From positions 124,001 through 188,000 of the IMG/VR virus record IMGVR_UViG_3300032116_000001: DNA of 64,000 nucleotides, one strand, 5' to 3'. Every line of letters begins with the position of its first letter. Position 1 is the stretch's first letter. Made by a program: the position numbers and the translations under genes. Positions 46,569-64,000 of the stretch are shown here, piece by piece. The notes under the pieces are model-generated. The model was given only the letters and a program-made list of their open reading frames with translations. It ran no database searches and had not been told where the DNA came from.

Positions 46569-46575
46569 GCTTCAC

Positions 46576-47247
46576 TTACATTGAAGTCGATAGATAGTTT
46601 TTGGGTCCTAGTTCTTGACTTCTTAAATATTCAAGAGTTTCTTTCTTTTCTATATAAAAGCTTTGATATTTATACAAATCTATTTCTGGATAATATATTA
46701 CTCTCCTTATCACCCCATCTCCATAAACATCTCTGTGAGCTAGAAAACTAAATCCATGCCTTCCACAATAACTTGAACTCTCTGTTAATTTTGGATACAC
46801 TCTCTCGCTTAATATTGCCCTAAGTTTACTACAATTTTTTAAAGAAAGTATGTAGTTTTTACATTCTGTGATAAATTTCAAAGAAAAAAGACCCATATTA
46901 AGCCAACCTTCATCTCCGATTGCTATATGATCATGGGTGCATCCTCTTTTTGCAATTAGATTCAAGAAATTGCTTCCAACCTCAGTTGTGTCATGCAATA
47001 CCCACCACCACGGGTTAGTATTATTCGACTCTAGTAAATAAATTAACCCAGTGTGATCATAGGAATTATGATTAACATAAGCGTAGGTTATGTTGTTTTT
47101 GCGTATTGTTTGTTCAAATTCGGCCCCACCAACAACGACTAGTATTTGGTCATTTTTAACGCCGCATTTCAGAAGACTTTTTATAAGCTTTTCTGCATGT
47201 TTTTTATGCGAGCTTATGTGCGAAGATACTAAAAAATTTATCATCAT
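46576..47247 (-). CDS. GT-A-like glycosyltransferase-related protein
   Basis: ILVVVGG, HNSYDHTGL, WVLHDT; located in the glycosyltransferase cluster. Confidence 0.5.
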   Translation of the reverse strand: MMINFLVSSHISSHKKHAEKLIKSLLKCGVKNDQILVVVGGAEFEQTIRKNNITYAYVNHNSYDHTGLIYLLESNNTNPWWWVLHDTTEVGSNFLNLIAKRGCTHDHIAIGDEGWLNMGLFSLKFITECKNYILSLKNCSKLRAILSERVYPKLTESSSYCGRHGFSFLAHRDVYGDGVIRRVIYYPEIDLYKYQSFYIEKKETLEYLRSQELGPKNYLSTSM

Positions 47248-48038: not shown

Positions 48039-48039
48039 T

Positions 48040-48876: not shown

Positions 48877-48879
48877 GTA

Positions 48880-49977
48880 TTACTGGCCTTTGCCCCAGAT
48901 ATATCTGAAGAATCGGCTGCGCCCACCAGGCATATTGAATTCGGGAACAGTAATAGAGCCAATTTTGGGAAATTGAGCAATGGGAAGTTTTTTAAGAAGA
49001 TCATCAAAGTCTTCTTTGTACATTTTTGCAGTGTCTCTTAGGCTATTTATCGCATCATAAGTGCCAGAATCTGGGTCTTGAAGCAATAATCTTTGCTGTC
49101 TTTGATTAAGACCAACAAGCAAGCTTCTTATCAGAAAATATGTTGCACCGTAAATAATTGCTGGCTCATAATAATAAGGCGCACTAATAATTGTAGGATA
49201 TTTATTCGCGCCTGGCTGGGCATTAACAATTTGTAATGCATGGTGCATAGCATCATTCATTTGTGATCCAGTAAATAATCTTACATTATAGCTTACCATC
49301 ACTGTATCATAAGGGTGAATTTCCACTGGATCGTCATTTTCGTCAATAAAGTAAATAGTGCCCTTATAATCAAGTTTAATTTTTAATCCGTCGGGATAAT
49401 TTGGGTTAGGACCATTGATAGTTTGATTAATAGTTTCGTATTCAGAAAGTATAATCATGGGCTCTCTATTCCCATCGCTACTATACCCTGTAATTCTTAC
49501 TTGCGGTCGTGGGGTATAATTCCAGAAAGAAAATGCTACAGTGGCCTTGGTTCTGTCTTTGTTAAAAATGACTTCTTCGTCGTAGATAGGGACATTAAGC
49601 AAATGCAATAATTCGTGCCTTAGACTTGATTTTATTAGAAGCTCGTCACCATTTATAGGCTGACTGGTTGTAATAACCACGTCACTGGCGTTTACTTCTT
49701 GTATTTTGTAATAACTACTTGCTAACCCGTCTTCATCTACGTAGTCATTTTGCGGGAAGTCAACGCTGCCTACCAGTGAATATGGACCATCTATGTGGCT
49801 TGATCTTAGAATGTTATATTTAGAAACACCAGTCAAAGTGTATCTTTCCCATTCTATGTAAATGCCCTGGGCTTCCGAGGAGTTTGAATAATAAATAAGC
49901 GGACTTTCACTATATGTTTGGGATTCAAATCCCCCAAGCATATTAATCTCATTTGTTTGCTGTGTTTCTTCGGACAT
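48880..49977 (-). CDS. Putative neck/head-tail connector with N-terminal FN3-like domain
   Basis: IEWE..YNILRS..YVD..YYKI; C-terminal adaptor-like FTGSQMNDAMHHALQIVN..AIIYGATYFLIRSL. Confidence 0.5.
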   Translation of the reverse strand: MSEETQQTNEINMLGGFESQTYSESPLIYYSNSSEAQGIYIEWERYTLTGVSKYNILRSSHIDGPYSLVGSVDFPQNDYVDEDGLASSYYKIQEVNASDVVITTSQPINGDELLIKSSLRHELLHLLNVPIYDEEVIFNKDRTKATVAFSFWNYTPRPQVRITGYSSDGNREPMIILSEYETINQTINGPNPNYPDGLKIKLDYKGTIYFIDENDDPVEIHPYDTVMVSYNVRLFTGSQMNDAMHHALQIVNAQPGANKYPTIISAPYYYEPAIIYGATYFLIRSLLVGLNQRQQRLLLQDPDSGTYDAINSLRDTAKMYKEDFDDLLKKLPIAQFPKIGSITVPEFNMPGGRSRFFRYIWGKGQ

Positions 49978-50006
49978 GATTAGTGCAAGCCTCTCTTTGC
50001 TTTTAA

Positions 50007-50042
50007 AAAGCGGCTTGCATATATTTCAATGCAAGCCGCTTT
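50007..50042 (-). terminator. Terminator-like hairpin after 50068..50895
   Basis: 14-bp stem aaagcggcttgcat / atgcaagccgcttt with a T-run on the - strand. Confidence 0.65.
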
Positions 50043-50067
50043 AGGCATTTGTTTTCAATGCGGCTGA

Positions 50068-50895
50068 TTATTTCTTTCTTTTCACTGAACCCTTTGCCCT
50101 TGTGTTTGTCTCAGATGCTTCATCTTCTGACAAGTCAATTTCATGGGCAACAGCAACTTCGTCGCTTCCTTCCAGGTCTACATCCACACTATTATATCTT
50201 CGGTCACCAGCCATATAACCATCATTATTGAAATTGGTCATTTGTTCACTTCTGGTACTTGTACCGTCATAAGGGTTGGCAGGCGGCTCAGCAAATACGG
50301 CTCGGCCTTTTCGGGGATCGCCCGAGGTGGAGCTGTTGCTAGAATTAACATATCGCCCAATTAATGAAGGGTCATTCTCAACAAGCTCAGCAAAAGCTTC
50401 AACAGTTAGTTCTCTTCCTTGTGCCGCTGCCTCAACCTGAGCAGCGTTTAAAGCAGTGACATAAGTAAGTGAGTCATTGGCATAACCACTTGTTGATACT
50501 TCTGATTTTTTATTGTACGAGTTTTGTGCATCGAAGGTTTCTGCAACAATTTGTTTTCCGTCAGCATCGGTAACTACATTCATTTTGCGACTTGCTTGCG
50601 CTCGGCCTAATGAATCTTTTTCTTTTTGAATTCTGGCATCTTCAATTCTTTCAAATTCCTCCCGAGTAATTCTTCGCAAAATGCCAGATTTTAAAGAATA
50701 TTTAAGATTATTGCTACTCTTAACATACAGGGGATTTTCCCATGTAAGGTCCACGATACCAAAAGGCTCAATTGCGAGCTTAATGTCAGATACGTAATGT
50801 GGTCCAAGCGTGACGTTCTGGATAATGAAGTCTTCTCTAGGCTGCATGTCAGAGTATGCTTCAATTTTTTCAGCAAGGCTGCGGTTTCTATTCAT
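50068..50895 (-). CDS. Hypothetical protein
   Basis: 275-aa ORF with aaaggag SD. Confidence 0.75.
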   Translation of the reverse strand: MNRNRSLAEKIEAYSDMQPREDFIIQNVTLGPHYVSDIKLAIEPFGIVDLTWENPLYVKSSNNLKYSLKSGILRRITREEFERIEDARIQKEKDSLGRAQASRKMNVVTDADGKQIVAETFDAQNSYNKKSEVSTSGYANDSLTYVTALNAAQVEAAAQGRELTVEAFAELVENDPSLIGRYVNSSNSSTSGDPRKGRAVFAEPPANPYDGTSTRSEQMTNFNNDGYMAGDRRYNSVDVDLEGSDEVAVAHEIDLSEDEASETNTRAKGSVKRKK

Positions 50896-50970
50896 TATTT
50901 TTAACTCCTTTTTGTTTTTTTGAGTTTTAAGACTTATTATAGTCTTAAAAAATTAATTATATATTTAAGA

Positions 50971-51333
50971 CTATTTTACCTTCTTTGCAGAAGATGCATC
51001 TATTGGAAGGCTTGTTACGCCGTCAATTCCTTCTTTTCCAGTCCAGATTTCATTAGATTTTCCTTCTCTGGTGTCAGGCCCATAAGTTTTTTTTCTTACA
51101 TCTCTTTGATCCTTCATAAATTTGCCCATTTCTTTGCGGGTTTTTGTGGTCCCTATGCGTTTTTCTTCTGCTGTGAGCCCATGATGGACGCTAACTGACG
51201 AGTCAAAAACACGTTTTCCAAATCCATTTCCGCATGGGCAAGGCATTTCTTCCTTGTATTCAGAAATAGAAATTCTGAGAACGAATGTTTTTCGCTCTCC
51301 ATTACAATTGCATTCATATTCATATCGTGGCAC
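50971..51333 (-). CDS. FmdB-family zinc ribbon protein
   Basis: MPRYEYEC..CPCG..KRVF. Confidence 0.75.
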   Translation of the reverse strand: MPRYEYECNCNGERKTFVLRISISEYKEEMPCPCGNGFGKRVFDSSVSVHHGLTAEEKRIGTTKTRKEMGKFMKDQRDVRKKTYGPDTREGKSNEIWTGKEGIDGVTSLPIDASSAKKVK

Positions 51334-51414
51334 TAGTCCTACACCTTAGGGATAATTTGGCTTTTGCTTGCCTTAATTGAATTTTGTACAACAAAAGGTG
51401 AAAAACATAATATC

Positions 51415-51606
51415 ATGAGCGTAAAAAATATTATTGATCCTACAATGACGGTTACTATGTATTGTGTCAAATGTCGCACAATGGTGGCGGTAACTGGTTT
51501 GGAAAGGACTGTATTGAAAAATGATCGACATGCCTTACGAGGTCAATGCCCTCATTGCTCAACTTTTGTTTATAAAATTGTCTCCAAGGACGAAGTCTTT
51601 AATTAA
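51415..51606 (+). CDS. Small DUF5679-like zinc ribbon protein (ORF open from 51364)
   Basis: MYCVKCR..KNDRHALRGQCPHCSTFVYKI. Confidence 0.75.
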   Translation: MSVKNIIDPTMTVTMYCVKCRTMVAVTGLERTVLKNDRHALRGQCPHCSTFVYKIVSKDEVFN

Positions 51607-51621
51607 TTAGGTGAAAATACT

Positions 51622-53730
51622 GTGGATAAAATTCAAAAAATAACCCTGGCACAAGCAGCAGAAATGGCTTTGCTTGAAGGTGGTGTTCAGGCTGTTCAAC
51701 AGTTAAACAAAGGAATTCAAAATGAAGAAAATAAGCAACAAGTTAATCCCGACGGAACTTCAAATTTAGACAAGCCAATTACAGATGAGCTGGAGCGCAT
51801 CCGCGCTGAGCAATTAGTCACAGAATCGCTTGGGACATTTGGTATTGACAGGGCCGCTGCAGAAAACTATATGAAGGTGATCGCTGAAAAAACTGGCGCT
51901 CCTTTCACGCACCAGGTTCAAATTTTACAAATGATTGGCCAGAAAGCGGGTGAAATGGGAACAACACCACAAGATATTTTCCCTTTAGTGCTTGCTATTT
52001 ATATCAGAAATAAGGATGTTCAGTTAACACAGGGCATACTGTCTATATTGGCAAAATATGAAAGCCAAGCGCCAGGCATTGGGGTATTAGATGTTGCTAA
52101 AAAAACAGCCATGGGACAACCCACTGGTCACGAATTGATGCAAATTAGAATTGCTCTTATGGCAGCAGGTGGTGAATTTAATAGTAAGGGACTAACTTCA
52201 ACAAAAGATTTGGAAAAGGCTATTTACAGCATTGTGGCCCCGCAAAGCGAGTCTGGAGCCGCGATTATGAAGTGGCAAGAACAAAGACTAAAAACACAAA
52301 GTGGCATAGAAGATTGGCTGAGATCACTTGGGAGATTTCAGGCTAATTACTCTACACAAAGACTTAAGAAAGTTGAAGAGGCTTATGAATTTTTGATAAA
52401 AACATTTCCTAACATTGCCACCACAGCCCCTATGGATTGGTGGATGAAGGTTTTAAATGGTGTTGCCGCAGCTTCGACGGTTAAGGAATATGGTATGATT
52501 GCTATCAATCCCACCATTCAGGGTGAAACACCTGTCCAAAAAATTCAACAGATGAGCCAGATGCCGCTTATAAACCGAGGAGCAAATAATCAATCTAAAA
52601 TTATAACGGCACAATCTGCTCCTCAAGATTTAAGGAGCCAAGACCCTGTTGCAACAACCTCGGCAGGGCAAAACCAGCAATCAATACCAAACTCAGGCGA
52701 AGTTGATATCGCTACCCAAGTGGCCAATCAAGCTAATAATGCGCAATTGCCCGCTTCCGTGGAGCCTATGCTGGGGCAGTTTTTAAACAGCACTCAGATG
52801 GGCAAAGAGCTTTTGGTTGCAATTGACGTTTTTGAACGAGGGCAGCTAATTCTTGACACTGAAATGAAGACTTTGCAAGACATTATTGCAAAGTCGGGAG
52901 CAACTGATTACATGGCAGACGGTAGGCCAAATAATGCCGTTTTCATGACTCCTGAACAATTTCAACAAGCTGCCACACGAGTATACAACTTAGCCACGCA
53001 GCAACAAACAGTACTGGTTAAAATTCTTAATTTATTCAGCTCCATGGTGAATCAAATAGAAAACAGGCCCCAGTTATTAAGTTTAATTCAAAAAGCTATT
53101 AGCGAGTGGAGAGCAAGGCATGCAAAGGTTGAGTCAAATTTAATTACCGCATTTGAGCTTCAGCTAGTTGGACCAATTGAGCAATCTATAGCTATGCTTA
53201 TTCCACAAAAAGAATATTTACAAAACGGTATTCAAATGGCCGCAATGATCAACAATATCGGCGCGGACCAATATGTTGGCCCATTTAGCGCCCTGTGTAT
53301 GCAGATTAGCAATTTGCGCGAAGAGGCTTCAAAGCGATATATGAAAGTCGCCTCTAATGCTAAAGTTCTCCCTCAGTTTAAAAACTATGCCTTACAAAGA
53401 GCAAGACAGCAAATGCAGCAAGCGCTTGCTGTTAGAAACGAGGGCGTCATGGCGGTAATGAAAATGTCACAAGGTATTTTTGGTGGACAATCCCTCTTGC
53501 CAACTGCAGACACAAAGGCATGGGTGAAGTTATCTTCAGAAAGATTCCCAGACGATGATATAGAGAAATTGGCAGACGCTAAGCTCGAAGAATACTGGAA
53601 TGAACTTTATGAAGATTCTCCTGGCGCTGAAGGCTATGGCACAGCCATAGAGCACGCTGTTGAACTACACGGAGTTCCAACAAAGGAAATATCACAAAAA
53701 AGCAAAATGAAAAGAAACCAAGACTGCTAA
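51622..53730 (+). CDS. Large Q/A-rich helical hypothetical protein
   Basis: 702-aa ORF, aggtg SD; internal KIITAQ and AWVKLSS motifs. Confidence 0.75.
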   Translation: MDKIQKITLAQAAEMALLEGGVQAVQQLNKGIQNEENKQQVNPDGTSNLDKPITDELERIRAEQLVTESLGTFGIDRAAAENYMKVIAEKTGAPFTHQVQILQMIGQKAGEMGTTPQDIFPLVLAIYIRNKDVQLTQGILSILAKYESQAPGIGVLDVAKKTAMGQPTGHELMQIRIALMAAGGEFNSKGLTSTKDLEKAIYSIVAPQSESGAAIMKWQEQRLKTQSGIEDWLRSLGRFQANYSTQRLKKVEEAYEFLIKTFPNIATTAPMDWWMKVLNGVAAASTVKEYGMIAINPTIQGETPVQKIQQMSQMPLINRGANNQSKIITAQSAPQDLRSQDPVATTSAGQNQQSIPNSGEVDIATQVANQANNAQLPASVEPMLGQFLNSTQMGKELLVAIDVFERGQLILDTEMKTLQDIIAKSGATDYMADGRPNNAVFMTPEQFQQAATRVYNLATQQQTVLVKILNLFSSMVNQIENRPQLLSLIQKAISEWRARHAKVESNLITAFELQLVGPIEQSIAMLIPQKEYLQNGIQMAAMINNIGADQYVGPFSALCMQISNLREEASKRYMKVASNAKVLPQFKNYALQRARQQMQQALAVRNEGVMAVMKMSQGIFGGQSLLPTADTKAWVKLSSERFPDDDIEKLADAKLEEYWNELYEDSPGAEGYGTAIEHAVELHGVPTKEISQKSKMKRNQDC

Positions 53731-53806
53731 TATTGAATTGACGCAATAATACTTGGCAGTTACGCTCTTTCATTTATAATGAAAGTAAAAAAAATGGAGA
53801 GATACA

Positions 53807-54949
53807 ATGTCATTGCAAAATTTAATTGATTCTTTGGTCTTTGACAACAATTGTGGTGATTTTATTGAGTCAACTCAGATATGTAAATGTCTTGTGCCTG
53901 CGTATATTGGCGCTTTTTCGGGATATGATAAAATCAGATCAAAAGCATTGCCAGTGGATAAATACACGGCAGGGGATACAAATAATTTTGGATTTCAAAC
54001 ACTTGATACTCCTCAACTTTCAAAAAATCCTTCAAGAATATCCAGAAGATATTCGCCCATTGTAAGACAAGAATTTTCTGGACATCGATCTGATGATCCA
54101 ACATTTTTAAAAATTGAATCAAATAATAAAAATCAATACTATCCTGGGGCACTAGAGCGAACAACAAGTTTGATTACTTTATTTAGTGATCAGTCTGATT
54201 TAATCTTTGATCAAGGAGACCAATTGCATGATGGGCTTGAAGATGATCCAGATGTTATTCGACTACTAAGGGCCATGAATAATGAATTAGAACTTAAAAC
54301 GTCTTTCTCGGAAGACATGGCTGGACCAGATGATATTGACTTCTTTACTGATACTTTGATATTTTCAGAAACACCCAAAGAAAATTTGATTTTAGATTCT
54401 AGTAAAAATACAAATATTACCAACAATACCACAAATAATAATTATTTAAATAATGTTTATAGCAAATTAGAGACTGTTATTAATTCTATAGCCACGGAGA
54501 ATCAGCCACAATATGTCAATGATTCCTATGCTGGAGCCGAATCTAAGGTCAACACTTTTGAAAAATTGGAAAAAGAAAGTGAAAAGATAGCTATGAAAAG
54601 AGCAGAAAATCGCATTAAAGACAGAGTTCATAATGATCTTCCTAGTGTAATAGAAGTCACGAATTCAATTGCTCGCGAAATTACAAAACAACCAACTCAT
54701 GCGGTAAGCAATATATCTCAAGGTAATAATCCTGTATCATTAACAACAGGCCTTGACACCCCTGTGACAACTAAACAAATTCAAGCCATGCATGAAAATC
54801 AAAATAATAAAGCAGAAATTATTAAAAGAGAAATAAGCAAAGAAATTCGTGAAGAATCTGCAAACACTATACAGAAGAAATTTAAACAGTCTGAGGAAGA
54901 TAGTGTTAAAAGAATGAGAACTGCACTTAACAGGATATTAAATTCGTAA
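53807..54949 (+). CDS. Hypothetical protein
   Basis: 380-aa ORF, ggag SD, ttggca-N16-tataat upstream; stop overlaps the next start. Confidence 0.75.
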   Translation: MSLQNLIDSLVFDNNCGDFIESTQICKCLVPAYIGAFSGYDKIRSKALPVDKYTAGDTNNFGFQTLDTPQLSKNPSRISRRYSPIVRQEFSGHRSDDPTFLKIESNNKNQYYPGALERTTSLITLFSDQSDLIFDQGDQLHDGLEDDPDVIRLLRAMNNELELKTSFSEDMAGPDDIDFFTDTLIFSETPKENLILDSSKNTNITNNTTNNNYLNNVYSKLETVINSIATENQPQYVNDSYAGAESKVNTFEKLEKESEKIAMKRAENRIKDRVHNDLPSVIEVTNSIAREITKQPTHAVSNISQGNNPVSLTTGLDTPVTTKQIQAMHENQNNKAEIIKREISKEIREESANTIQKKFKQSEEDSVKRMRTALNRILNS

Positions 54950-57900
54950 TGCCTGACCCGTATGTAAACCCTAATAAAACCATTCCATCTGGAGGATATT
55001 TGTGGGTGCCTAATGTCACCCCAAACGGCGGCGCAACGCCAATAGGATTTCGTCCGACGATTGTGGGCCGAGGTCAGTTTCGAAATGATTTACCAGTACA
55101 GACTGATTATCCCAACGGCAGTGTTGTAGTTACTTATGATGGTGAATTAATTTCTTTGGAAAATTCTGAAAATTGGCCATTCTTAAATGCTTTTAGACCT
55201 CTTCAAAGACCATCTGCGGTCAGAGGGGCAGCCCCCAATAGTCCCTTTATTGTCTCGGGCACTGATTGGAAGTGGCAAGTGGATTTAAAAACTCCCACGC
55301 GGCTTTCCGCAGCCACGTTTACATACTCTTTAACAGTGGATGTTCAAGATGACTCTGTATTCAATCTTATAGATCGAGAAAGTGATGATGGCAGAGCTAT
55401 ATTGGCTTATCGATCCAATCCATCACAATCACTTGACATTGACTGGTCTAAATATATTTGGGGGCGTGTTGATGTTGATGACATTGAGTTTCCGCCATTG
55501 GTGGAAGATAAGCCATCACAAATAGCAGTTACGGGTATCCAATCAACTACCGATAATCAAGCTGAGCCGACAACAACTGTTACTATAAAATTTGGAACAG
55601 GATTAAATGCAGAGGATTATCAAATAAGGCAAAAATTAACCATTAAAAATAGGCACGAAATTTCTGCTCTTAAATTCTCTCTTCATGAAATACTTTTATT
55701 TGACGCAGCGCGAGTTAACCTAATCGAAGAACAGCTTCCATGCGCCCTTCTGTCTTATGCCTTTCCAGTGGCATTTAATTACAGCCCTTCACGCGGTTCA
55801 TTAGTGCATCCAAATAATTTATCAACCCCTAATTTTCACGTAAAGCTTTTTCATCCAGAATCCAATACTAATAGTCCTGGGTTTGCCCACTCAATGTCAG
55901 TGAGATTTTTACTTTTTTCAATGCCGATTTCTGGCATCGATCCATTTTCTTTTTTTGGTGTAGCCAATCCATTTTCTTTGTACTTTGTTGTGTTTATTGG
56001 CCCCGTTCCTGGTAAACGAACCCTCAGATATGGCATGATTGGCAAATATTCGAAAGCCACGGCTGGCCGCGTAGTTCCAGTAGATTATTTTACTCTACAA
56101 CAAAATGCAAGAATATTCAAAATTCAAAAAACAGAATCAGAAGGAAGACCAAGTGATAATGCAACATGGACCGATGTTGACAATGGTGAATATGACCCAC
56201 AAAATATTCCCGCATTTGATCCGATTCGAGGTCCGTGGCTAAGGCATTTTACGTATTTTGATGACAATGGTGATAATAAATCTTGGTATAGAGTTATTCA
56301 GACATTAAGCACGGGCAATCAATTTATTGGTCCGAGTTTTCAGGGAAGTCTTTTTTCTGAAAGATTGCCACTCAGAATGGTTGATAGTCCATCAACCACC
56401 ACAGCGATTGACTCAACAACTTTGATAAGAAGAATTCAAGTTGATTCAGGTAACAACCCATTAAACTCTAATCCATTGGCCTTGTTTGTTGCAGTCAATG
56501 AAGACCGTCCACCCGCCGATCCCGTAAATTTTGTTAAAGGTTCATGGAAGCTATCACTTCGGGCAGCATGCCCCGATCCGAATTATCTCTCGTACTCTCA
56601 CTTATATGCAAGAATTTGGTTTGTTCCAGAAGACCATAATATTTCAGAAACAAATATACATGAATACCGAGACAAAACTGAAATATGTTTTGAAACATCA
56701 GATGGGCAAACCAAACTAGTTCGTCGTGCACCAAGGTCATTGTCTGAGCTAATGGTTTCTCCACCATTGCCACAATCGATATCTGATTTAGAGATAGCAA
56801 GATACATAGATGTTGACACTAGCTTTAATTTTAATCTTGGCTCTAGAGCCAAGATGGTAGCAGGGCTATACGAAGTCACTGCTTTGAGCGAGGACGGCAT
56901 AAGTTCTGATCTTTCTAATAATGACTATGATTTACCTAAAATCAACATTGAAATAAACGCAGAATCAACGGCGGTTGATACTACGCTGCAACAAACACTG
57001 TCGCAGGTGTTGTATCCACAGAGAGCATCTAATTTTGATTCCTCAAGATATATTATCTATCCAAAACCATTGGTTGTATCAACAAAATTGGTCGGGGGAA
57101 GTGAAATACCATCGGGTAATGATGTTTATACTGAGTACAATAAAACCTTTGCTTCAAAAACAGACAATAATTCAAATATAACCAATGCCTTTGACCAACT
57201 TTTAACATTTGTTAAATCTGGCCAAGATAATAATATTGGAAAAGTTGGAATCCCATTTGAAAATGTCCCACAACAAAGAGACCCAAACCTTTTTGTTGTG
57301 GCCGACTTTGTCACAAATGATCTTTCATTACAGGCAGGCAAAATAGATACGGGACCATGGAGTATTGTATTGCGATCACATAGGTCCATTGACAATGAAC
57401 GCATAGCTATTGACATAAGACTTGAGGCCATGCTTGTAACAACTGATGGCCGCGTGTCAGAAAGAATTTTTAGGTCACCTTATATAAAGGATCGCGGCCA
57501 AGAAGAAGCTGATTATGTTTATGACGTTGACTTACAAATTCCGTTTCTTATAGGAAACTCTGACACTCAAATGGTTTTAAGAGTATACGCTTATCCTTAT
57601 TCCAGAAGTGGCCAGTTGCTTGATATCAATGCCATTAAATCTAGTTTAAATAACTTATCAGGTATAATACCTTTCGGCTTAAGAATTCAAGAACTCACAA
57701 TTATTGATCATACTATTAATAGGCTTGAAATTGATCAAATAGATTCGGTTTTGGGATCGCCAGCTTTTTATGAAGACTTGCCATTGGTGCCCAATCGAAC
57801 AATTGGTGATCAAGAATTTTGGTTTATCGCTGCTAATGATTTATTGACAACAAGGGTTGTTGATGGCTTGCGTGGCCTTGATGTTACTGGTTGTATTTAT

Positions 57901-59247
57901 AGTCCAACATGGTTTGTGAATTTACCAAAAGACATTGAGGTACGATCAGGTGCCCAAGGCTTTAGAGACAGACTGGTTTGGTTTAGAACCGTGCCTGCTG
58001 AGGGGGATAATTTGGGAGAGTTTGCAGTTTCAGCACTTGAAAATCCAACAAGCGGCAGAATTCATGTTGTTCAAGACGGCGACCCTGAGATTTCAAGCCA
58101 GTCATTTAACTCTATGAATGCGACTGGAAAAATAATCAAACAATATAGTTTTGACGCACCTTATTTACCACTGCTTGACAAAGGAACTGTGCAGGGGCCA
58201 AATGGCAATGGGTTTAGAGACTTTGAAGGAAAAAACCCAAGTATTGTAATGATGCCTACAACTATGAGTGGAGAAAATCCATCTCTTATTGCATTGGTTG
58301 CCCAAGCTGATGATAGTGAATCTTCTTTCAATGTCGCACTTAATGCTCGCAGCGGTTTAGTGGGAAGCTGGATCGGTCCAAATAGAGAACTTGGTGAGTC
58401 TGAGTTCGGAAAAATAAGAAAAGTTGCACAAGGCATGTTCAATCCATCTGTTGCGATATCTAATAATGGCGTCAGCGCATATGTTGCTGGCTGGGTCAAT
58501 CCTGGAACTATAGTACTTAAGCAGACAAATTTATTTGATGCTCGTAAATCAACCACAATCGCAGAGGGCTTAAATTTCATTATTGATGGCGACCCTAATC
58601 CATCATTGGGCTCTGGACAAAGATCAATTATTCCAAGGGGCAGTTTATCGGGGAAAGCTACGCAAACATTTCCAGCAATTATGATTGATGATCGAGAAAT
58701 TGTAACAATTGCTTATGCAATTGATGGTGAATCAGGAAAACTATTTGCACGAAGATTTGACGGATATAATGTGAGCAACAAGTTTCTTCTAGCTGATTTA
58801 AGGGCTCAGGGCACCGCTGGAAATGATACAATTTCTATTTTTGGACCCGCGCTAGCCTGGAACAAAAAAACACATTCAGCATTTATGGCTTGGTGGTGCG
58901 GAGGTAAAATTTTTGCAGGATCGTTTTCTCTGCTAACTTCTGACTCTTCACAAAGTCTGCTCACTCCTATTCAATTAGTTGCTGGAAACAGAGACTTTAC
59001 GTCCTCGGGGAACTCAGCACATGCATCATTTATAGCATTGAAATCCAATGGCTCATTAAGAGTTGATCAATTGGGCACACCAGAGCAAGACGTCCCAAGA
59101 CAAAGAGTGGGCCTGTTTGTTAGTCAAAAATTCCCCCACCAAGGCAATTTATTCATTTGGTATCGAGACTCCGAGGGCAATTTGAGAATGCGCGAGGTGA
59201 TGATTGGCGGAGTGGTCGGAGCCCCAACTATATACTCGCAAGATTAA
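54949..59247 (+). CDS. Large beta-rich virion (tail/baseplate-associated) protein
   Basis: 1432 aa, P/S/N-rich beta composition with propeller-like repeats (NPSIV, NPSVA, FPAIM, GPALA). Confidence 0.55.
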   Translation: MPDPYVNPNKTIPSGGYLWVPNVTPNGGATPIGFRPTIVGRGQFRNDLPVQTDYPNGSVVVTYDGELISLENSENWPFLNAFRPLQRPSAVRGAAPNSPFIVSGTDWKWQVDLKTPTRLSAATFTYSLTVDVQDDSVFNLIDRESDDGRAILAYRSNPSQSLDIDWSKYIWGRVDVDDIEFPPLVEDKPSQIAVTGIQSTTDNQAEPTTTVTIKFGTGLNAEDYQIRQKLTIKNRHEISALKFSLHEILLFDAARVNLIEEQLPCALLSYAFPVAFNYSPSRGSLVHPNNLSTPNFHVKLFHPESNTNSPGFAHSMSVRFLLFSMPISGIDPFSFFGVANPFSLYFVVFIGPVPGKRTLRYGMIGKYSKATAGRVVPVDYFTLQQNARIFKIQKTESEGRPSDNATWTDVDNGEYDPQNIPAFDPIRGPWLRHFTYFDDNGDNKSWYRVIQTLSTGNQFIGPSFQGSLFSERLPLRMVDSPSTTTAIDSTTLIRRIQVDSGNNPLNSNPLALFVAVNEDRPPADPVNFVKGSWKLSLRAACPDPNYLSYSHLYARIWFVPEDHNISETNIHEYRDKTEICFETSDGQTKLVRRAPRSLSELMVSPPLPQSISDLEIARYIDVDTSFNFNLGSRAKMVAGLYEVTALSEDGISSDLSNNDYDLPKINIEINAESTAVDTTLQQTLSQVLYPQRASNFDSSRYIIYPKPLVVSTKLVGGSEIPSGNDVYTEYNKTFASKTDNNSNITNAFDQLLTFVKSGQDNNIGKVGIPFENVPQQRDPNLFVVADFVTNDLSLQAGKIDTGPWSIVLRSHRSIDNERIAIDIRLEAMLVTTDGRVSERIFRSPYIKDRGQEEADYVYDVDLQIPFLIGNSDTQMVLRVYAYPYSRSGQLLDINAIKSSLNNLSGIIPFGLRIQELTIIDHTINRLEIDQIDSVLGSPAFYEDLPLVPNRTIGDQEFWFIAANDLLTTRVVDGLRGLDVTGCIYSPTWFVNLPKDIEVRSGAQGFRDRLVWFRTVPAEGDNLGEFAVSALENPTSGRIHVVQDGDPEISSQSFNSMNATGKIIKQYSFDAPYLPLLDKGTVQGPNGNGFRDFEGKNPSIVMMPTTMSGENPSLIALVAQADDSESSFNVALNARSGLVGSWIGPNRELGESEFGKIRKVAQGMFNPSVAISNNGVSAYVAGWVNPGTIVLKQTNLFDARKSTTIAEGLNFIIDGDPNPSLGSGQRSIIPRGSLSGKATQTFPAIMIDDREIVTIAYAIDGESGKLFARRFDGYNVSNKFLLADLRAQGTAGNDTISIFGPALAWNKKTHSAFMAWWCGGKIFAGSFSLLTSDSSQSLLTPIQLVAGNRDFTSSGNSAHASFIALKSNGSLRVDQLGTPEQDVPRQRVGLFVSQKFPHQGNLFIWYRDSEGNLRMREVMIGGVVGAPTIYSQD

Positions 59248-59283
59248 CACAATTCGCTTCGCGCAGACGTATTAGAATTGTCC

Positions 59284-59308
59284 AGGTAAAATTTTGGAAT
59301 ATATGGAA
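59284..59308 (+). promoter_or_regulatory. AGG-N19-GAA motif 11 nt before the cca start
   Basis: AGG taaaattttggaatatatg GAA. Confidence 0.65.
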
Positions 59309-59319
59309 AAATAAAATTC

Positions 59320-61488
59320 ATGTGGTATCGATTTGCTCAAAAAAAATCAAAAAACGAAGGCGTATTTTATCACCCTTTGGACATTTCTTTTAGTTCAACA
59401 CTAAGGGGAATATTTGATTTTCTGAGACAAAAAAATTACAAAGCATTAATTGTTGGCGGATCGGTAAGAGATGCTTTGCAAGGCATAAGCCCCAAAGATA
59501 TCGACATTGAGGTTTATGGAATATCATATGATGAATTGGCAAAACTTTTGTCTAACTTTGGCAAAATAGACATTGTTGGGAAAACATTTGGTGTAATTAA
59601 GCTTTCAGACAATGAAGGCAATGACTTTGATTTTTCTATTCCCCGAAGAGAAAATAAAACAGGAGTGGGCCATAAAGACTTTTCTGTAATTTTTGACCCC
59701 AGTATTAATCCCAAGGAGGCCGCGGCTCGCAGAGATTTTACAATTAATTCGCTGGCTTACGACCCATTAACAGAAGAAGTGCATGATTACTTTGGTGGCA
59801 TTGAAGACCTTCAAAACAAAGTTCTGCGACATACAAGCAATGCATTCGCAGAGGACCCACTTAGGGTTTTGCGCGGAATGCAATTTGCCACAAGATTTAA
59901 TATGAATTTGGCCCCTGAAACTGCGAATATTATTAGGGAAGAAGTTTCGGATGATGAGCACTACCATTCTTTGGCTAAAGAAAGAATCTCAGAAGAATTT
60001 ATGAAAATGGCCACAAAAGGCAAATATCCTGGCAGGGCGATTCAATATTTAAAGGACACGGGATGGATTAGATTTTTTCCTCAGCTTGAGGCAATAATTG
60101 GCGTGCCACAAGAATATGAGTGGCACCCAGAAGGCTGGTCTCATTCATTAATTTCTAAAAAAAGCATTAATAACCAAGGTCAGAAACTTCCAATTGAAAA
60201 TTTGACTCGCGAATTTCTTAATAGTGCCATTCGTGAATATCGGGCCAATCAACAAAAAACATTCAGAAGAAATTCCTCTTCACGTCAATCAAGAAGTATT
60301 TTGGCAGATAGCACCTTAAAAGAAAAACAAAACATTGCTTTTGAGATTCCAATAACAACCTTGATGTCAGTGATGGGGGATTCATTGGAAGAACACGCTG
60401 TTGTTCAAAATATGATTTACTCTGTTGCATCTTATGCGGCGGGCTCAATTTTGGGAGATCACAATAGCGCAAATGTGGGGTTTGCTAATCGCTCTAGCGA
60501 TAACGCGCTTGATGCTGTTATAGATAATGCTGTATTTTCTGTTGATAATGACAGAATTTTATTCAATTTTGATTTGATATTTCGCACAAATAAAATTAAT
60601 GATGCACAAACATTGAGCACAAAAGATGTGCATTTTATCACAATCGGTGACGTTGGCACTCATACTTCACACGTTATGGACGCGGCTGCTGAAATTGCGG
60701 ACAGAGATGGTTTACAAGGGGATGAACGTGCCGCCCTGATTTTTGCTGCCCTTGGGCATGACCTTGCGAAAGCCACTACCACCGAACAAAGAGAAAAAGG
60801 TGGAAAAATCAGATGGACGGCTCATGGCCACGAGGAAGCATCTGTTCCAGTGGCAGAAGAACTTTTGCAATCAATAGGCATTAAGCAAGATATTATCAAG
60901 CGCGTACTACCGATTATTGAGCGGCATCTTGAACACATTAGGTTTAATCCAGCGACATCGTCTATTGCTCAAATTAGGCAATTAGCAAATAGCCTACACC
61001 CTGCTAATATTGAAGATTTGGCAAGATTAATGGAAGCAGACTCTAGTGGCCGACCACCATTGCCCAAGGGCCTCCCAGATCAAGCCAGACTAATGCTCAA
61101 TTTGGCCCGAGAAGACGGCTCCAATGCTGGCCGACCAAATCCCCTAATACAGGGCAGAGATGTGATGCCTTATTATCAAAACAGGGGCGGCAAGCATATT
61201 GGCGAAGTGGTGCAAGATGCTTATAACGCGCAAATTAAAGGAAGAATTTCCACTGTGGAACAAGCAAGGGAGTGGTTAGATAACTATCTTCGTGGTCGCA
61301 CATCTTTACTAAGAGGAGACGATATACTACCATATTTTAACAACAATGGCGGCCCACATATTGCTGAAATTCTAAAGCAGGCCTGGACCGCGCAACAAGC
61401 TGGGGAATTTGATACTCAAGAATCCGCAAGAAGCTGGCTGTCTAATTACATGCAAAACAAATCAAATAAGCCAGATGCGACTGTATAA
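59320..61488 (+). CDS. cca: CCA-adding tRNA nucleotidyltransferase with HD domain, 171-aa insertion and duplicated tail domain
   Basis: VGGSVRD, DIDIEV, RRDFTIN, EDPLRVLR, ERISEE, HPEG..DVGTHT, ALGHDLAK. Confidence 0.92.
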   Translation: MWYRFAQKKSKNEGVFYHPLDISFSSTLRGIFDFLRQKNYKALIVGGSVRDALQGISPKDIDIEVYGISYDELAKLLSNFGKIDIVGKTFGVIKLSDNEGNDFDFSIPRRENKTGVGHKDFSVIFDPSINPKEAAARRDFTINSLAYDPLTEEVHDYFGGIEDLQNKVLRHTSNAFAEDPLRVLRGMQFATRFNMNLAPETANIIREEVSDDEHYHSLAKERISEEFMKMATKGKYPGRAIQYLKDTGWIRFFPQLEAIIGVPQEYEWHPEGWSHSLISKKSINNQGQKLPIENLTREFLNSAIREYRANQQKTFRRNSSSRQSRSILADSTLKEKQNIAFEIPITTLMSVMGDSLEEHAVVQNMIYSVASYAAGSILGDHNSANVGFANRSSDNALDAVIDNAVFSVDNDRILFNFDLIFRTNKINDAQTLSTKDVHFITIGDVGTHTSHVMDAAAEIADRDGLQGDERAALIFAALGHDLAKATTTEQREKGGKIRWTAHGHEEASVPVAEELLQSIGIKQDIIKRVLPIIERHLEHIRFNPATSSIAQIRQLANSLHPANIEDLARLMEADSSGRPPLPKGLPDQARLMLNLAREDGSNAGRPNPLIQGRDVMPYYQNRGGKHIGEVVQDAYNAQIKGRISTVEQAREWLDNYLRGRTSLLRGDDILPYFNNNGGPHIAEILKQAWTAQQAGEFDTQESARSWLSNYMQNKSNKPDATV

Positions 61489-61522
61489 AAGAATACATTA
61501 GGCTCATCACAACACCACTGAT

Positions 61523-61547
61523 AGGATGATGATCTTGAAAAACAGAA
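61523..61547 (+). promoter_or_regulatory. AGG-N19-GAA motif 12 nt before ATG 61560
   Basis: AGG atgatgatcttgaaaaaca GAA. Confidence 0.6.
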
Positions 61548-61559
61548 AAATATACGCAG

Positions 61560-64000
61560 ATGGCTGATATAAGAGAATTAAATGCGACTTGCATAATCGG
61601 GGCGATATTCGTTCCATCTGGTGGTTACATCGGAGGGACATATTCTCGCACAAGGGTGCAAAAAGACCCCGCTAATTTAGCACCATCTACATTTAATTAT
61701 AATTCTAACAGGCCCAGTGATGTTTCGCCAAGGCTTCAGCCAATAGCACAAAATGCTGGTTCATTAATGGCAATTCCCAATAAATTTGTGGGAGCATCGC
61801 TTTGTACATTTGTTTTTGGGGGCATAGCACCTGATGATAACAAAAGCGGTAATGCAAAGCATCCATTGTTTAATCTTATTAAAGGTCCAAAAACATCTGT
61901 GGCCTATGATGATGACCCCAACACAATTTTAAAATATGACCCGACTTTTGATGGGGAAGCCAATGTCGGCACAACGGGAGATACAGAGGATGATTTTCCA
62001 GACTATACACCAGTAATACCCCCAGTGCCATCCTCGCAATTTCCTTTTATACCCTCAGTATCTAGCTCAAGGTTTCAAAATGCTCAAATACTACCAACTT
62101 ATAATATTTGGAAACTAAGCAACATTGATGAATCTCAACTGACTTATAAGAAGTATTATGGTCCAGTTTTTCCCGATGGTTATCAAGGGCCACACATACG
62201 TCAAGTTTTTAACTCGGACGGTTCTTGCTCCGTTGAGGTTAGCGCACAAAATGTTGCGGCTGACATTAAAAGAATTTTCCCAATATCGAGAGATTTGATG
62301 TATGAAGATGGAGCAAAGTTATATTATCCAACATCTTCTGAGCAAACTTTTTCAAGAGAAATTAAAGCCCGCGGTGGAAAAAATTGCGGATTCCAAATAC
62401 ATTTTAACCACTCAACTGTGTCTTCAATGACTAATCCAAAATCAAGCGATAGTACAGGAAGCATTAGAATAACATGGGGGAACAATGCGCCTTTAAAAAA
62501 AGGCGACTATATAACAAACTATATGCTGACGTTAGTTCCTGGAAAATCTCCAGAACTTACGTTTTATCACCCAGGCAAGGGAGAGTGGACAACATTCCCT
62601 CTAAATGGCCCAACTTTTGGCGGAGGGGACGGCAATTATTCAGTTTATGTGCATTATTCTGGCCCATCAATGCTTGTAGGTTTTGATTCTGATATGAATC
62701 AGTGGAACACATTTTCTCCACTTGATGATAGACAGGGTGGAGATTATGCCAGAATTTACGAACATCTTATCGATGAAACAGCATCTATAAGCATGATATT
62801 AACCAATATAACCACTTCGTTTCAGTATGGCGGGATTGCTTTTAGTAATTACAATCCTGAACAGCGCATTCCTGATGCCAATGGCAATATTGATCCAGAT
62901 AGTGATTATGGCTTCAATAAAGTTAGTTTTTCGGCCCCTAAAGACAAAGAATCAACAATAACACCATCTGCTATTCAAAAAAACCTAGATAAGCATAGAT
63001 ATTTATCAAAGTCTCAGCAAGATTTTGAAAATGATTTTGAAAGCAATGCTTCGTATTACGGCGACTGGAGGTCTCCTGGCCCCGAGCTTATTTATATTGA
63101 AAAAACAAGAGCTTCTGATTCTATCAGCACTCAAGTTGAGGGAATTATACAGTTTAGAACAACAATCGAGGGTGTGGGATTCTTGCATGTTCGAAACTCT
63201 GATGAGGGCACATCAACTGCGTCGCAAGGCCAGACACTCGGAGATTCGGCTGCTGGAAGTTTTTTCTCCGAAACATCAATTGCCTCAGAAGCCGAAACCC
63301 CTTCTTCTGCGGTTAGAAGCAAGGTTGTTCAGGAACTTCCTTGGGGTGATATTTCACAATGGCTTACTGGATGGTCTATTAACTATTCTCTTAACGGAAA
63401 TAATCGCACATCTGTTGAAGGTCGCGCAAACATCACGCTTGTAAACATGGCGTTAACGGAAGAAGGAAGCCAAATTTTAGATGTTCTTGAGAACAACACA
63501 CTTGCCGTGACATTATCTGCTGGCTACGGCGACACACCTGTGTATTTTCAGGGAATAATAGAGTCTCAGAAAACCACAAGAGAGGGCAACAAGATGGTTA
63601 CGGTTTTGACAGCGACAGATGTCGCGACGAAGTGTCTATCAGATATACCATTCAGAAGCGTATTGTATTTCGGAGGCATGCGATACGGAAGAATTCTTGA
63701 TTATTGTATTGCTTGTTCTGGATTCGGGGATCATTACATTAGGCAATCCGACTCGACTGATGAAAGATTTTCTATTTTTCAGAATAATATGAATTTCAGA
63801 CTTTCAAACTCGCCAATTTCTGAAAGTTTGGCCAACGATGTTCTTAGTGCTAATTTTAAGAAAGTTATCATGGACGTAATTCGTCCCACTTTAGACTTAA
63901 TATCTAGTAGAGAGGCTCTCCCTGTGTTGTTCTGGGACTATGACAACCAAATCATTCGCATAGGATGGAGGTATGAACCAGATTATCAAGATTCATTAAA
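61560..64000 (+). CDS. Baseplate hub/tail-associated protein, runs off the window end (missing from the ORF track)
   Basis: Manual translation MADIRELNATCII... stays open to position 64000; distal DISQWLTGWSINY..RANITLVN..VTLSAGY..YFQGII..LTATD is hub (gp27/gpD)-like. Confidence 0.7.
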   Translation, partial: MADIRELNATCIIGAIFVPSGGYIGGTYSRTRVQKDPANLAPSTFNYNSNRPSDVSPRLQPIAQNAGSLMAIPNKFVGASLCTFVFGGIAPDDNKSGNAKHPLFNLIKGPKTSVAYDDDPNTILKYDPTFDGEANVGTTGDTEDDFPDYTPVIPPVPSSQFPFIPSVSSSRFQNAQILPTYNIWKLSNIDESQLTYKKYYGPVFPDGYQGPHIRQVFNSDGSCSVEVSAQNVAADIKRIFPISRDLMYEDGAKLYYPTSSEQTFSREIKARGGKNCGFQIHFNHSTVSSMTNPKSSDSTGSIRITWGNNAPLKKGDYITNYMLTLVPGKSPELTFYHPGKGEWTTFPLNGPTFGGGDGNYSVYVHYSGPSMLVGFDSDMNQWNTFSPLDDRQGGDYARIYEHLIDETASISMILTNITTSFQYGGIAFSNYNPEQRIPDANGNIDPDSDYGFNKVSFSAPKDKESTITPSAIQKNLDKHRYLSKSQQDFENDFESNASYYGDWRSPGPELIYIEKTRASDSISTQVEGIIQFRTTIEGVGFLHVRNSDEGTSTASQGQTLGDSAAGSFFSETSIASEAETPSSAVRSKVVQELPWGDISQWLTGWSINYSLNGNNRTSVEGRANITLVNMALTEEGSQILDVLENNTLAVTLSAGYGDTPVYFQGIIESQKTTREGNKMVTVLTATDVATKCLSDIPFRSVLYFGGMRYGRILDYCIACSGFGDHYIRQSDSTDERFSIFQNNMNFRLSNSPISESLANDVLSANFKKVIMDVIRPTLDLISSREALPVLFWDYDNQIIRIGWRYEPDYQDSL

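What the first reader, a model, noticed from the sequence alone, without database searches (positions are those of the whole stretch)
60136..60648. 171-aa in-frame insertion at the HPEG/DVxxHT junction of the CCA-adding enzyme
Seen: the normally contiguous motif HPEG-DVxxHT, which supplies the first His of the HD domain, is split by 513 nt with no stop (WSHSLISK...VHFITIG), and Gly flanks both sides. The insert lacks the N-terminal Cys/Ser and C-terminal His-Asn of inteins and matches no domain I recognise. Staying open over 171 codons in AT-rich DNA implies it is translated. Its in-register antisense reading contains stops but has a faint HNH-like stretch (RRIRCNRVNHILNN), which is only speculative. 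Inference: a novel inserted domain, a non-canonical self-excising element, or a domesticated mobile-element remnant at a conserved site.
Basis: partly seen in the sequence, partly recalled or inferred. Interest (0 to 1): 0.65.

Follow-up and report, generated by a model that had tools for sequence, protein, structure and literature searches.

The report
Decayed antisense homing endonuclease inside CCA gene
The 171-codon insert in this jumbo phage's CCA-adding enzyme gene is the worn-out remnant of a selfish HNH homing-endonuclease gene that sits on the opposite strand and is apparently tolerated because the host reading frame runs through it without a stop.

Summary
Window 60136-60648 is a 513-nt, stop-free, in-frame insert between HPEG and DVGTHT of a 722-aa CCA-adding enzyme, and an independent contig spans it.

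It is not a new sense-coded domain, an intein or an intron. It is homologous (35.7 bits, E 3.5e-13) to 669-675-nt inserts at the same codon junction in related phage CCA genes. Those full-length inserts carry an intact 205-aa HNH_3 endonuclease ORF on the opposite strand, in codon register.
- Selection acts on the antisense frame (dN/dS 0.11-0.19), not the sense frame (0.35-1.12).
- The HNH ORFs use none of the three codons (TTA, CTA, TCA) that would put a stop in the host frame; about 10 are expected.
- The element is patchily spread among near-identical host genes (at least 8 gains or losses).
- It can be far more similar between phages than its flanks are (98.7% against 80-86%).

In the window the endonuclease is dead: 9 stops, catalytic His-His changed to Arg-Arg, zinc-finger part deleted. 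The host frame is still open (P about 2e-6).

The closest precedent is the ShiLan hidden-HNH insertion, which lies on the same strand. The antisense arrangement is a new variant.

The parts
59320..61488 (+). Host gene: class II tRNA nucleotidyltransferase (CCA-adding enzyme) with a C-terminal HD domain, 722 aa including the insert
   Evidence: Pfam PolyA_pol 4e-22 and HD 4e-10. PHROG 2244 tRNA nucleotidyltransferase 2e-68. AF2 model mean pLDDT 89.8, and the top Foldseek PDB hits are CCA-adding enzymes.
59320..60135 (+). Upstream host part (head/neck, ends ...EWHPEG)
   Evidence: 76% identical to the insert-less P0003. Codon-position differences 61/28/182 indicate purifying selection in the sense frame.
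60136..60648 (+). Sense read-through of the insert: 171 codons with no stop (WSHSLISKK...VHFITIG), a 'shadow' translation of the antisense element
   Evidence: P of no stop about 2e-6. Matches the profile of long inserts built without it at 35.7 bits, against at most 13.3 bits in 2000 shuffles. No Pfam, PHROG or PDB hit, and atlas recognition below threshold.
60136..60648 (-). Decayed HNH homing-endonuclease gene, antisense and in codon register with the host frame: 9 stops and about 52 codons (the zinc-finger part) deleted relative to intact 669-nt elements
   Evidence: Intact homologues are HNH_3 at 33.3 bits (cut-off 24.8) and PHROG HNH at 1e-12.
60400..60441 (-). Remnant of the HNH catalytic core (RRIRCNRVNHILNN). 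It aligns to HHRDGNRLNNAVDN of intact copies; the two catalytic-motif His are now Arg
   Evidence: The best six-frame match of the intact-HNH HMM in the whole window is at 60289-60513 (-), and it is weak.
60649..61488 (+). Downstream host part: HD domain (starts DVGTHTSHV) and a C-terminal tail with two tandem copies of about 50 aa
   Evidence: Pfam HD at 446-560. Codon-position differences to P0003 of 63/27/191 indicate purifying selection.

Best explanation
The insert is the degenerate remnant of a homing-endonuclease gene (HEG) of the HNH_3 type. It invaded the CCA-adding enzyme gene at the codon junction HPEG|DV, in antisense orientation and in codon register. It has no intron or intein around it.

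Shown for intact relatives:
- The element is about 669 nt. Nearly all of it is a 205-aa HNH plus zinc-ribbon ORF on the opposite strand.
- That ORF is under purifying selection.
- It uses no TTA, CTA or TCA codons, so the host frame reads straight through it.

Inferred: the endonuclease cuts or nicks insert-less alleles at the conserved HPEG-DVxxHT coding sequence during co-infection. Repair then copies the element in (homing). The occupied allele is immune because the target is split. The host enzyme is made with an extra loop or domain of 170-225 aa at the start of its HD domain and still works.

Shown for the window's phage: the cycle has reached the decay stage. The endonuclease frame has 9 stops, has lost its catalytic histidines, and has lost most of its zinc-finger region. 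No intact copy exists elsewhere in the 378.8-kb genome. Selection has still kept the host frame open.
For: 1. Homology. The window insert scores 35.7 bits (E 3.5e-13) against a profile of the long inserts built without it; shuffles reach at most 13.3 bits.

2. Antisense HNH. The antisense in-register frame of the 669-675-nt inserts is open for 205-223 aa in L002, L005, L006, L007, L010 and L016. It matches Pfam HNH_3 at 33.3 bits (cut-off 24.8) and PHROG HNH families at 1e-12. It has relatives annotated as HNH homing endonucleases in 206 phage records.

3. Which frame is selected. Sense codon-position differences run 1>3>2 (93/37/63 and 46/6/21). Antisense dN/dS is 0.11-0.19 and sense dN/dS is 0.35-1.12. 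Antisense amino-acid identity is 65-92% where sense identity is 43-80%. The flanks have dN/dS 0.04-0.07.

4. Mobility.
- On a tree of the flanks, presence or absence needs 9 changes (at least 8 forced by starred branches). Sister pairs exist with and without the insert: P0007/P0031, P0008/P0027, P0010/P0017, P0064/P0066, window/P0003.
- L002 and L003 are syntenic, 82-85% identical in the flanks, and differ by a precise 669-nt indel.
- The P0008 and P0009 inserts are 98.7% identical where their flanks are 80-86% identical.

5. Read-through matters. Intact HNH ORFs contain 0 TTA/CTA/TCA codons against 9-10 expected (P 2e-6 to 1e-5 each). The window's sense frame has 0 stops against 12.6 expected. 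The HD part downstream of inserts stays under strong purifying selection (dN/dS 0.05-0.07).

6. Decay in the window. There are 9 antisense stops, HVHH has become *ARR, about 52 codons are deleted, and GC is 0.35 against 0.425 for the rest of the gene. There is no other copy in the genome.

7. No intron or intein. Rfam gives no intron match for the window (only weak sub-threshold snoRNA hits) and nothing at all for three intact loci. The RNA fold z-score is -0.52. The residue after the insert is D, A or G, never C, S or T.
Against: - No experiment or RNA data show that the insert stays in the mRNA and protein. The one metatranscriptome contig covers only 59952-60102.
- How the antisense ORF is transcribed and translated is unknown. 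No convincing promoter or Shine-Dalgarno sequence was seen.
- Endonuclease activity and target site are inferred, not measured.
- AF2 models most of the window's sense insert with pLDDT 85-94. This is unexpected for a mere shadow translation and leaves room for a structural or exapted role.
- On its own, the antisense remnant in the window is only weakly detectable by the HNH HMM (i-E 0.45). The assignment rests on homology to intact elements.
Confidence: 0.85

Rival explanations
1. The window's insert is, or has become, a functional sense-coded protein domain of the CCA enzyme: an exapted remnant that modulates tRNA binding or HD phosphohydrolase activity.
For: - The frame is open against strong odds.
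- AF2 predicts a compact alpha/beta module with pLDDT 85-94 for most of residues 273-443.
- A different insert (class B) at exactly the same site in another clade is under sense-frame purifying selection, with position differences 31/22/97. A real domain is therefore tolerated there.
Against: - In intact copies the sense frame evolves nearly neutrally (dN/dS up to 1.1).
- No Pfam, PHROG, PDB or atlas relative was found, and atlas recognition is 1989, below the 2300 reached by most real families.
- The closest relatives P0003 and P0004 work without it.
- GC is lower than in the gene and there is an internal deletion, both consistent with decay.
- An open frame is needed anyway if the downstream HD domain is to be made.
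Confidence: 0.1
2. The insert is removed from the RNA by an unrecognised self-splicing or host-assisted intron, with the endonuclease ORF on the antisense strand as in some rDNA group I introns.
For: - HNH endonucleases often reside in phage group I introns at conserved sites (general knowledge).
- Rfam models miss divergent introns.
- No RNA data cover the junctions.
Against: - There is no Rfam intron match in the window or in three loci with intact elements.
- There is no excess RNA structure (z -0.52).
- The antisense ORF fills 615 of 669 nt, leaving no room for a ribozyme core.
- A spliced intron would not need a stop-free host frame, nor avoidance of TTA/CTA/TCA in the endonuclease ORF.
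Confidence: 0.04
3. The insert is a non-canonical intein excised from the protein.
For: - It is an in-frame insertion at a conserved catalytic motif with patchy distribution.
- True LAGLIDADG inteins occur elsewhere in related CCA genes.
Against: - The first residue is Trp.
- The last residues are h-x-h-G, with no His-Asn.
- The residue after the insert is Asp, Ala or Gly, so no nucleophile is available.
- No Hint or intein Pfam hit in any insert class.
- The sense frame is not the selected frame.
Confidence: 0.01

Closest known systems
[quoted passage not shown]
   Same: - A stop-free insertion read in frame with a phage host gene.
- Patchy, intein-like distribution.
- No intron or intein features.
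- A complete HNH ORF hidden in another reading frame of the insertion.
- The insert is presumed to stay in the protein as a loop.

Same-strand examples of this kind turned up here in methylase genes (L026, L029, L073, L092).
   Different: - In ShiLan the HNH is on the same strand in a shifted frame. Here it is on the opposite strand, codon for codon in register, so it needs its own antisense transcript.
- The paper contains no mention of antisense or opposite-strand cases.
- The host gene here is a CCA-adding enzyme of freshwater jumbo phages.
- The window's copy is a decayed remnant.
Inteins carrying homing-endonuclease domains
   Same: - In-frame occupation of a highly conserved catalytic motif.
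- Sporadic distribution.
- A homing cycle that ends in endonuclease decay.
- They co-occur in the same gene family (LAGLIDADG_3 in P0010, P0031, P0032).
   Different: - No Hint domain and no splicing residues.
- The endonuclease is not part of the host polypeptide; it is encoded on the other strand.
- The inserted peptide is presumably never removed.
Phage group I introns with HNH endonucleases (e.g. I-HmuI of SPO1; my own knowledge) and I-PfoP3I (PMC3428280, title and abstract only)
   Same: An HNH-type homing endonuclease targeting a conserved site of a phage nucleic-acid-metabolism gene.
   Different: - No ribozyme match and no space for one.
- The host frame is kept open through the element.
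Free-standing HEGs that split a gene into pieces (mobE in nrdA of Aeromonas phage Aeh1; my own knowledge, not checked here)
   Same: An HEG inserted directly into a coding sequence without an intron or intein. The L014/L015 variant of this same element does this: the CCA gene is cut into a head ORF and an HD ORF.
   Different: In the window and most relatives the host gene is not split; it is read through the element.
Rickettsia palindromic elements (selfish DNA translated inside host proteins; my own knowledge)
   Same: Selfish DNA tolerated as an in-frame, translated insertion in proteins.
   Different: RPEs are short, multi-copy palindromic repeats with no gene of their own. This element is single-copy and is itself an endonuclease gene.

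Membership tests
HNH_3-type homing endonuclease gene | HNH (beta-beta-alpha-metal) catalytic motif recognised by the family model | tested here: met
   Met for intact homologues: P0175 scores 33.3 bits on Pfam HNH_3 (cut-off 24.8) and 1e-12 on PHROG HNH families. In the window's own copy the motif is degraded: HVHH has become *ARR and the HMM match is only i-E 0.45.
HNH_3-type homing endonuclease gene | Intact open reading frame in the window | tested here: not met
   The antisense in-register frame has 9 stops and lacks about 52 codons. It is a pseudogene remnant.
HNH_3-type homing endonuclease gene | Sporadic distribution, and a history that disagrees with the host gene (mobility) | tested here: met
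   At least 8 presence/absence changes on the flank tree. A precise indel between syntenic phages. Insert 98.7% identical against 80-86% for the flanks.
HNH_3-type homing endonuclease gene | Site-specific cleavage or nicking of the empty allele | not testable with these tools
   Needs purified protein and DNA substrates.
Hidden-HEG in-frame insertion elements (ShiLan type) | The insertion has no stop in the host frame and has no intron or intein signature | tested here: met
Hidden-HEG in-frame insertion elements (ShiLan type) | HNH ORF in an alternative frame of the same strand | tested here: not met
   The ORF is on the opposite strand in register. The same-strand alternative frames carry 10-33 stops.
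Intein | N-terminal Cys/Ser/Ala, C-terminal (His-)Asn, and a Cys/Ser/Thr nucleophile after the insert; Hint fold | tested here: not met
   The insert starts with Trp and ends ...ITIG, and the next residue is Asp. The same holds across 23 insert-bearing homologues. No Hint or intein Pfam hit.
Group I / group II intron | Ribozyme core detectable by covariance models, or excess structure | tested here: not met
   No Rfam intron match in the window or in three intact loci. Fold z-score -0.52. Splicing itself is not testable here.
Class II CCA-adding enzyme with HD domain (host gene) | PolyA_pol head domain, HD domain with H...HD...D, and a CCA-enzyme fold | tested here: met
   Pfam PolyA_pol 79 bits and HD 40.5 bits. 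Foldseek top hits are CCA-adding enzymes at E 1e-13. The invariant H448, H480-D481 and D574 are retained. Enzymatic activity is not testable here.

The most novel reading that the evidence does not exclude
Antisense, codon-register, read-through insertion may be a general third way for homing endonuclease genes to live inside conserved coding sequence, beside introns and inteins. The same HNH family is found antisense inside CCA genes and inside giant polyvalent proteins.

The 'shadow' peptide that the host is forced to translate may then be raw material for new protein domains. AF2 already folds the window's shadow with pLDDT around 90. An unrelated, sense-selected domain (class B) sits at exactly the same HPEG|DV junction in another clade, also beginning with Trp and ending h-x-h-G. 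It could be an exapted descendant of such an element.
Probability: 0.2. Interest if true: 0.85.

Novelty: new variant of a known kind. Interest (0 to 1): 0.62.

Why it matters
Homing endonuclease genes are thought to need an intron or an intein to sit harmlessly inside essential genes. The ShiLan case (2025) showed that a bare HNH gene can instead hide in another frame of a stop-free insertion.

This locus and its relatives extend that to the opposite strand:
- Two proteins are encoded codon for codon on both strands.
- Selection is measurable on the endonuclease frame.
- Synonymous-codon selection (no TTA, CTA or TCA) keeps the host frame open.

This explains a class of unexplained in-frame inserts in phage enzymes that annotation pipelines read as novel domains or, in some assemblies, as spurious small proteins. 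It gives a simple computational signature for finding more of them: sense codon-position differences 1>3>2, an antisense ORF, and missing stop-complement codons. It also raises two testable questions: how enzymes tolerate 170-225 extra residues at a catalytic motif, and whether such shadow peptides seed new domains.

Tried and rejected
- Pfam and PHROG scans on the sense insert and on 8 other inserts found nothing.
- PDB sequence searches with the insert profiles found nothing meaningful.
- A tblastn search of the sense insert against 50,697 phage records found nothing.
- A word search restricted to residues 273-443 found nothing at E <= 0.01.
- The search for related loci with the sense-insert alignment in viral contigs gave no confirmed locus.
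- The ESM atlas gave no usable hit for the window's insert or for the class B insert.
- hhalign of class A against class B inserts showed no similarity, so the two are not shown to share an origin.
- The own genome has no second copy of the insert and no intact HNH of this family.
- The megablast search of the last 20 kb of the window (44000-64000) against known phages found no match.
- AF2 of the HNH protein with a 5-sequence alignment gave pLDDT 52, too poor for a fold search, so it was not used as evidence.
- The promoter/terminator scan and reading of the region upstream of the antisense ATG gave no convincing expression signals.
- Read laying confirmed the assembly, but the RNA run does not reach the insert, so it says nothing on splicing.
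- A six-frame scan of the whole window with the HNH HMM found no other hidden copies.
- Considered and rejected: intein, group I/II intron, misassembly, and an alternative genetic code (not needed; the frame is open under table 11).
Full report
**Observation.** The gene at window 59320-61488 (+) encodes a 722-aa protein.
- Pfam finds a PolyA_pol head domain at residues 43-170 and an HD domain at 446-560. PHROG 2244 (tRNA nucleotidyltransferase) scores 2e-68.
- An AF2 model (mean pLDDT 89.8) matches solved CCA-adding enzymes.
- Residues 273-443 (nt 60136-60648) interrupt ...EWHPEG | DVGTHTSHV... with 171 stop-free codons.
- In 96 of the 120 best homologues the two motif halves are contiguous. 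This includes the closest relative, P0003, which is 76% identical and has the junction GGC|GAT.
- Composition predicts 12.6 stops in the insert, so P(none) = 2e-6, and 0 of 20,000 shuffles were stop-free. The other five frames hold 8-22 stops.
- The stretch is present in at least 19 DNA runs from 12 studies. An independent contig spans 59613-60840 without a difference.

The window lies in a 378,848-bp viral record rated complete, a jumbo phage, with most holders being freshwater metagenomes.

**The sense peptide matches nothing.** Pfam, PHROGs, PDB sequences, tblastn against phages, a region-restricted word search and the ESM atlas all gave nothing for it. Rfam gave no intron match, and the RNA folds no better than shuffles (z -0.52).

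**The insert is not unique.**
- 23 of the 120 best homologues carry an insert at exactly this junction. All start with Trp and end h-x-h-x-h-Gly.
- Class A inserts are about 223 aa and begin WSxSIV...LLTRD. The window's 171 aa and the 147 aa of P0012 are shortened class A members.
- Class B inserts are 140-162 aa and are unrelated by hhalign.
- A profile of the long class A inserts, built without the window's row, scores the window's insert at 35.7 bits (E 3.5e-13). The best of 2000 shuffles scores 13.3 bits.
- A profile search of 1.84 billion representatives found 55 proteins. Most are 640-770-aa proteins with the match at about residues 250-470. In those where the motif check succeeded, the match is an insert at this same HPEG|DV junction of a CCA enzyme.

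**The insert behaves as a mobile element.** I built a tree of 71 host proteins with the insert removed in-script.
- On that tree the class A label needs 9 changes, at least 8 of them forced by well-supported branches.
- Sister pairs occur with and without the insert: P0007/P0031, P0008/P0027, P0010/P0017, P0064/P0066 and window/P0003.
- L002 and L003 are syntenic and 82-85% identical in the flanks. They differ by a precise 669-nt indel at GGN|GCN.

**The key result came from the DNA.**
- In the flanks dN/dS is 0.04-0.07 with saturated dS.
- In the insert the sense-frame dN/dS is 0.35-0.79 and dS is much lower than in the flanks.
- The P0008 and P0009 inserts are 98.7% identical where their flanks are 80-86% identical.
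- Differences fall on sense codon positions in the order 1>3>2 (93/37/63 and 46/6/21). This is the signature of a gene on the opposite strand in codon register.
- That frame is open for 205-223 codons in every full-length insert examined: L002, L005, L006, L007, L010 and L016.
- Its product reads MSINIT...FLHRYIMEIHLGR...EHVHHRDGNRLNNAVDNL...HN... and is followed by six CxxC pairs.
- It matches Pfam HNH_3 above the gathering score (33.3 against 24.8 bits) and PHROG HNH families at 1e-12. It also hits 206 phage records by tblastn, and the annotated features under most of the listed hits are HNH or homing endonucleases.
- Re-computed in the antisense frame, dN/dS is 0.11-0.19 and amino-acid identity is 65-92%. 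In the sense frame identity is 43-80% and dN/dS reaches 1.1.
- The ORF's TGA stop is the complement of the Ser codon TCA in the 'W-S' that opens the sense insert. Its start lies 48 nt from the other end. The ORF therefore fills 615 of 669 nt and leaves no room for a ribozyme.

**The host frame is kept open by selection on the endonuclease's synonymous codons.** The five intact ORFs contain no TTA, CTA or TCA codons. These are the complements of TAA, TAG and TGA. Neighbouring-gene codon usage predicts 9-10 per ORF, giving P of 2e-6 to 1e-5 each. The HD domain downstream of inserts is under strong purifying selection. Together these argue that the host protein is translated through the element. 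That step is an inference; no RNA or protein data bear on it. The one metatranscriptome contig ends upstream of the insert.

**State of the window's copy.** I aligned it codon by codon to the intact elements and read it on the antisense strand.
- The window has 9 stops.
- The motif EHVHHRDGNRLNNAVDNL has become N*ARRIRCNRVNHILNNSV, so His-His has changed to Arg-Arg.
- About 52 codons of the zinc-ribbon region are deleted.
- GC is 0.35 in the insert against 0.425 in the rest of the gene.
- The genome holds no other copy of this HNH family.
- P0012 is a second, independently decayed copy with 13 stops.

**Mechanism.**
- Shown: an HNH gene in antisense register, purifying selection on it, avoidance of stop-complement codons, patchy and incongruent distribution, and decay in the window.
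- Inferred: the enzyme targets the conserved HPEG-DVxxHT coding DNA of empty alleles and spreads by repair-mediated homing during co-infection. Insertion destroys the target. The host enzyme tolerates a bulge of 170-225 residues at the start of the HD domain. After fixation the endonuclease decays, while the sense frame must stay open.
- Unknown: how the antisense ORF is expressed, and whether the HD activities survive.
- One oddity is that AF2 models most of the window's sense insert confidently, with pLDDT 85-94 outside residues 311-335. The atlas recognition score is nonetheless in the range of shuffled or reversed sequences. I keep an exapted or structural role as a 10% rival.

**Comparison with the known.** The only close precedent found in the library is the ShiLan domain (PMC11855218, PMC9957025). 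It is a stop-free insertion in mycobacteriophage methylase genes with a hidden HNH ORF in another frame of the same strand, and it is neither an intron nor an intein. That paper has no mention of antisense cases, and a search for 'antisense HNH' found no paper. The present element shares the strategy but puts the endonuclease on the other strand. I rate it a new variant of a known kind.

Among 80 viral-contig relatives of this HNH, 7 are embedded in longer open frames:
- Antisense in a CCA gene (L016).
- Antisense in two giant polyvalent proteins (L033, L062).
- On the same strand in four DNA methylases (L026, L029, L073, L092).

Both arrangements therefore recur.

**Verdict.** Interest is 0.62. 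The window's own copy is a dead relic, but it led to an undescribed antisense form of hidden homing endonuclease with a clean evolutionary signature.

Noticed in passing
L014:699-5651 and L015 (relatives; same HPE site): Here the same antisense HNH is intact but the CCA gene is in pieces. The head ORF ends 'WHPEESYP*' and the HD ORF restarts at 'MGNLEIHTSH'. The insert's sense frame (P0139, 216 aa) is still open but out of frame with both. The head ORF also carries a LAGLIDADG intein. The contig is 56% GC and has a WhiB gene nearby.
   Followed up: partly
L033:3186-3791 and L062:3360-3830 (HNH on +; host ORF on -): Related HNH ORFs lie antisense inside open frames of at least 2380 and at least 2342 aa. 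These are large polyvalent proteins (SLT, ddrB-ParB and DEAD domains in one; LPD22 and GGDEF in the other). The antisense read-through arrangement is therefore not confined to CCA genes. Whether relatives lack these inserts was not checked.
   Followed up: partly
L026, L029, L073 (N6_N4 methylases) and L092 (C5 methylase): ShiLan-like cases: an HNH ORF in a shifted frame of the same strand, embedded in an open methylase frame of 550-792 aa.
   Followed up: partly
P0015, P0024-26, P0028, P0030, P0033-35; DNA in L008:3802-4287, L009:6802-7221, L013: Class B insert (140-162 aa; WSHFDAPDHKR...ELTVG...RGCPxHVYVKMG) at the identical HPEG|DV junction.
- It forms one clade. One member lies on a 1.36-Mb Armatimonadetes MAG contig.
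- It is under sense-frame purifying selection (position differences 31/22/97) and has no antisense ORF.
- It has no Pfam, PDB or atlas relative.
- It also starts with Trp and ends with Gly.
- Its origin is unknown.
   Followed up: partly
P0010, P0031, P0032 (also P0035, P0065, P0079 have about 320 extra N-terminal residues): True LAGLIDADG_3 inteins, or other large inserts, lie upstream of HPEG in related CCA genes. P0031 has the intein but not the HNH element, P0007 has the reverse, and P0010 has both. The gene is a hotspot for selfish elements.
   Followed up: no
P0159 (7139 aa) and P0173 (3126 aa); P0163-P0172 and P0174 (107-238 aa): The sense-insert profile hits 10 stretches of a 7139-aa protein and 2 stretches of a 3126-aa protein. 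All correspond to the 'shadow' of the HNH core. It also hits several small proteins that may be wrong-strand gene calls over HNH genes. Their DNA was not examined.
   Followed up: no
window 60136-60648 (+), model m6a98e23697e4 residues 273-443: AF2 gives the shadow translation a confident alpha/beta fold: strands 274-279, 336-344, 399-421 and 436-441, and helices 297-312 and 358-378, with pLDDT 85-94. The exception is residues 311-335, which coincides with the deleted zinc-finger region. This is unexplained.
   Followed up: no
window 61150-61470 (+), protein residues about 610-715: The C-terminal tail of the CCA enzyme holds two tandem copies of about 50 aa: GRDVMPYYQNRGGKHIGEVV...REWLDNYL and GDDILPYFNNNGGPHIAEIL...RSWLSNYM. 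There is a weak Pfam tRNA_NucTran2_2 hit at residues 609-649.
   Followed up: no
window 54949-63998 compared with L002, L003, L005-L007: The CCA gene sits between a protein of about 1430 aa and another very large protein, in the same order as in related contigs of 80-178 kb. The neighbours have no Pfam hits in the relatives, and the relatives have an extra small ORF of 116-121 aa upstream that the window lacks.
   Followed up: no
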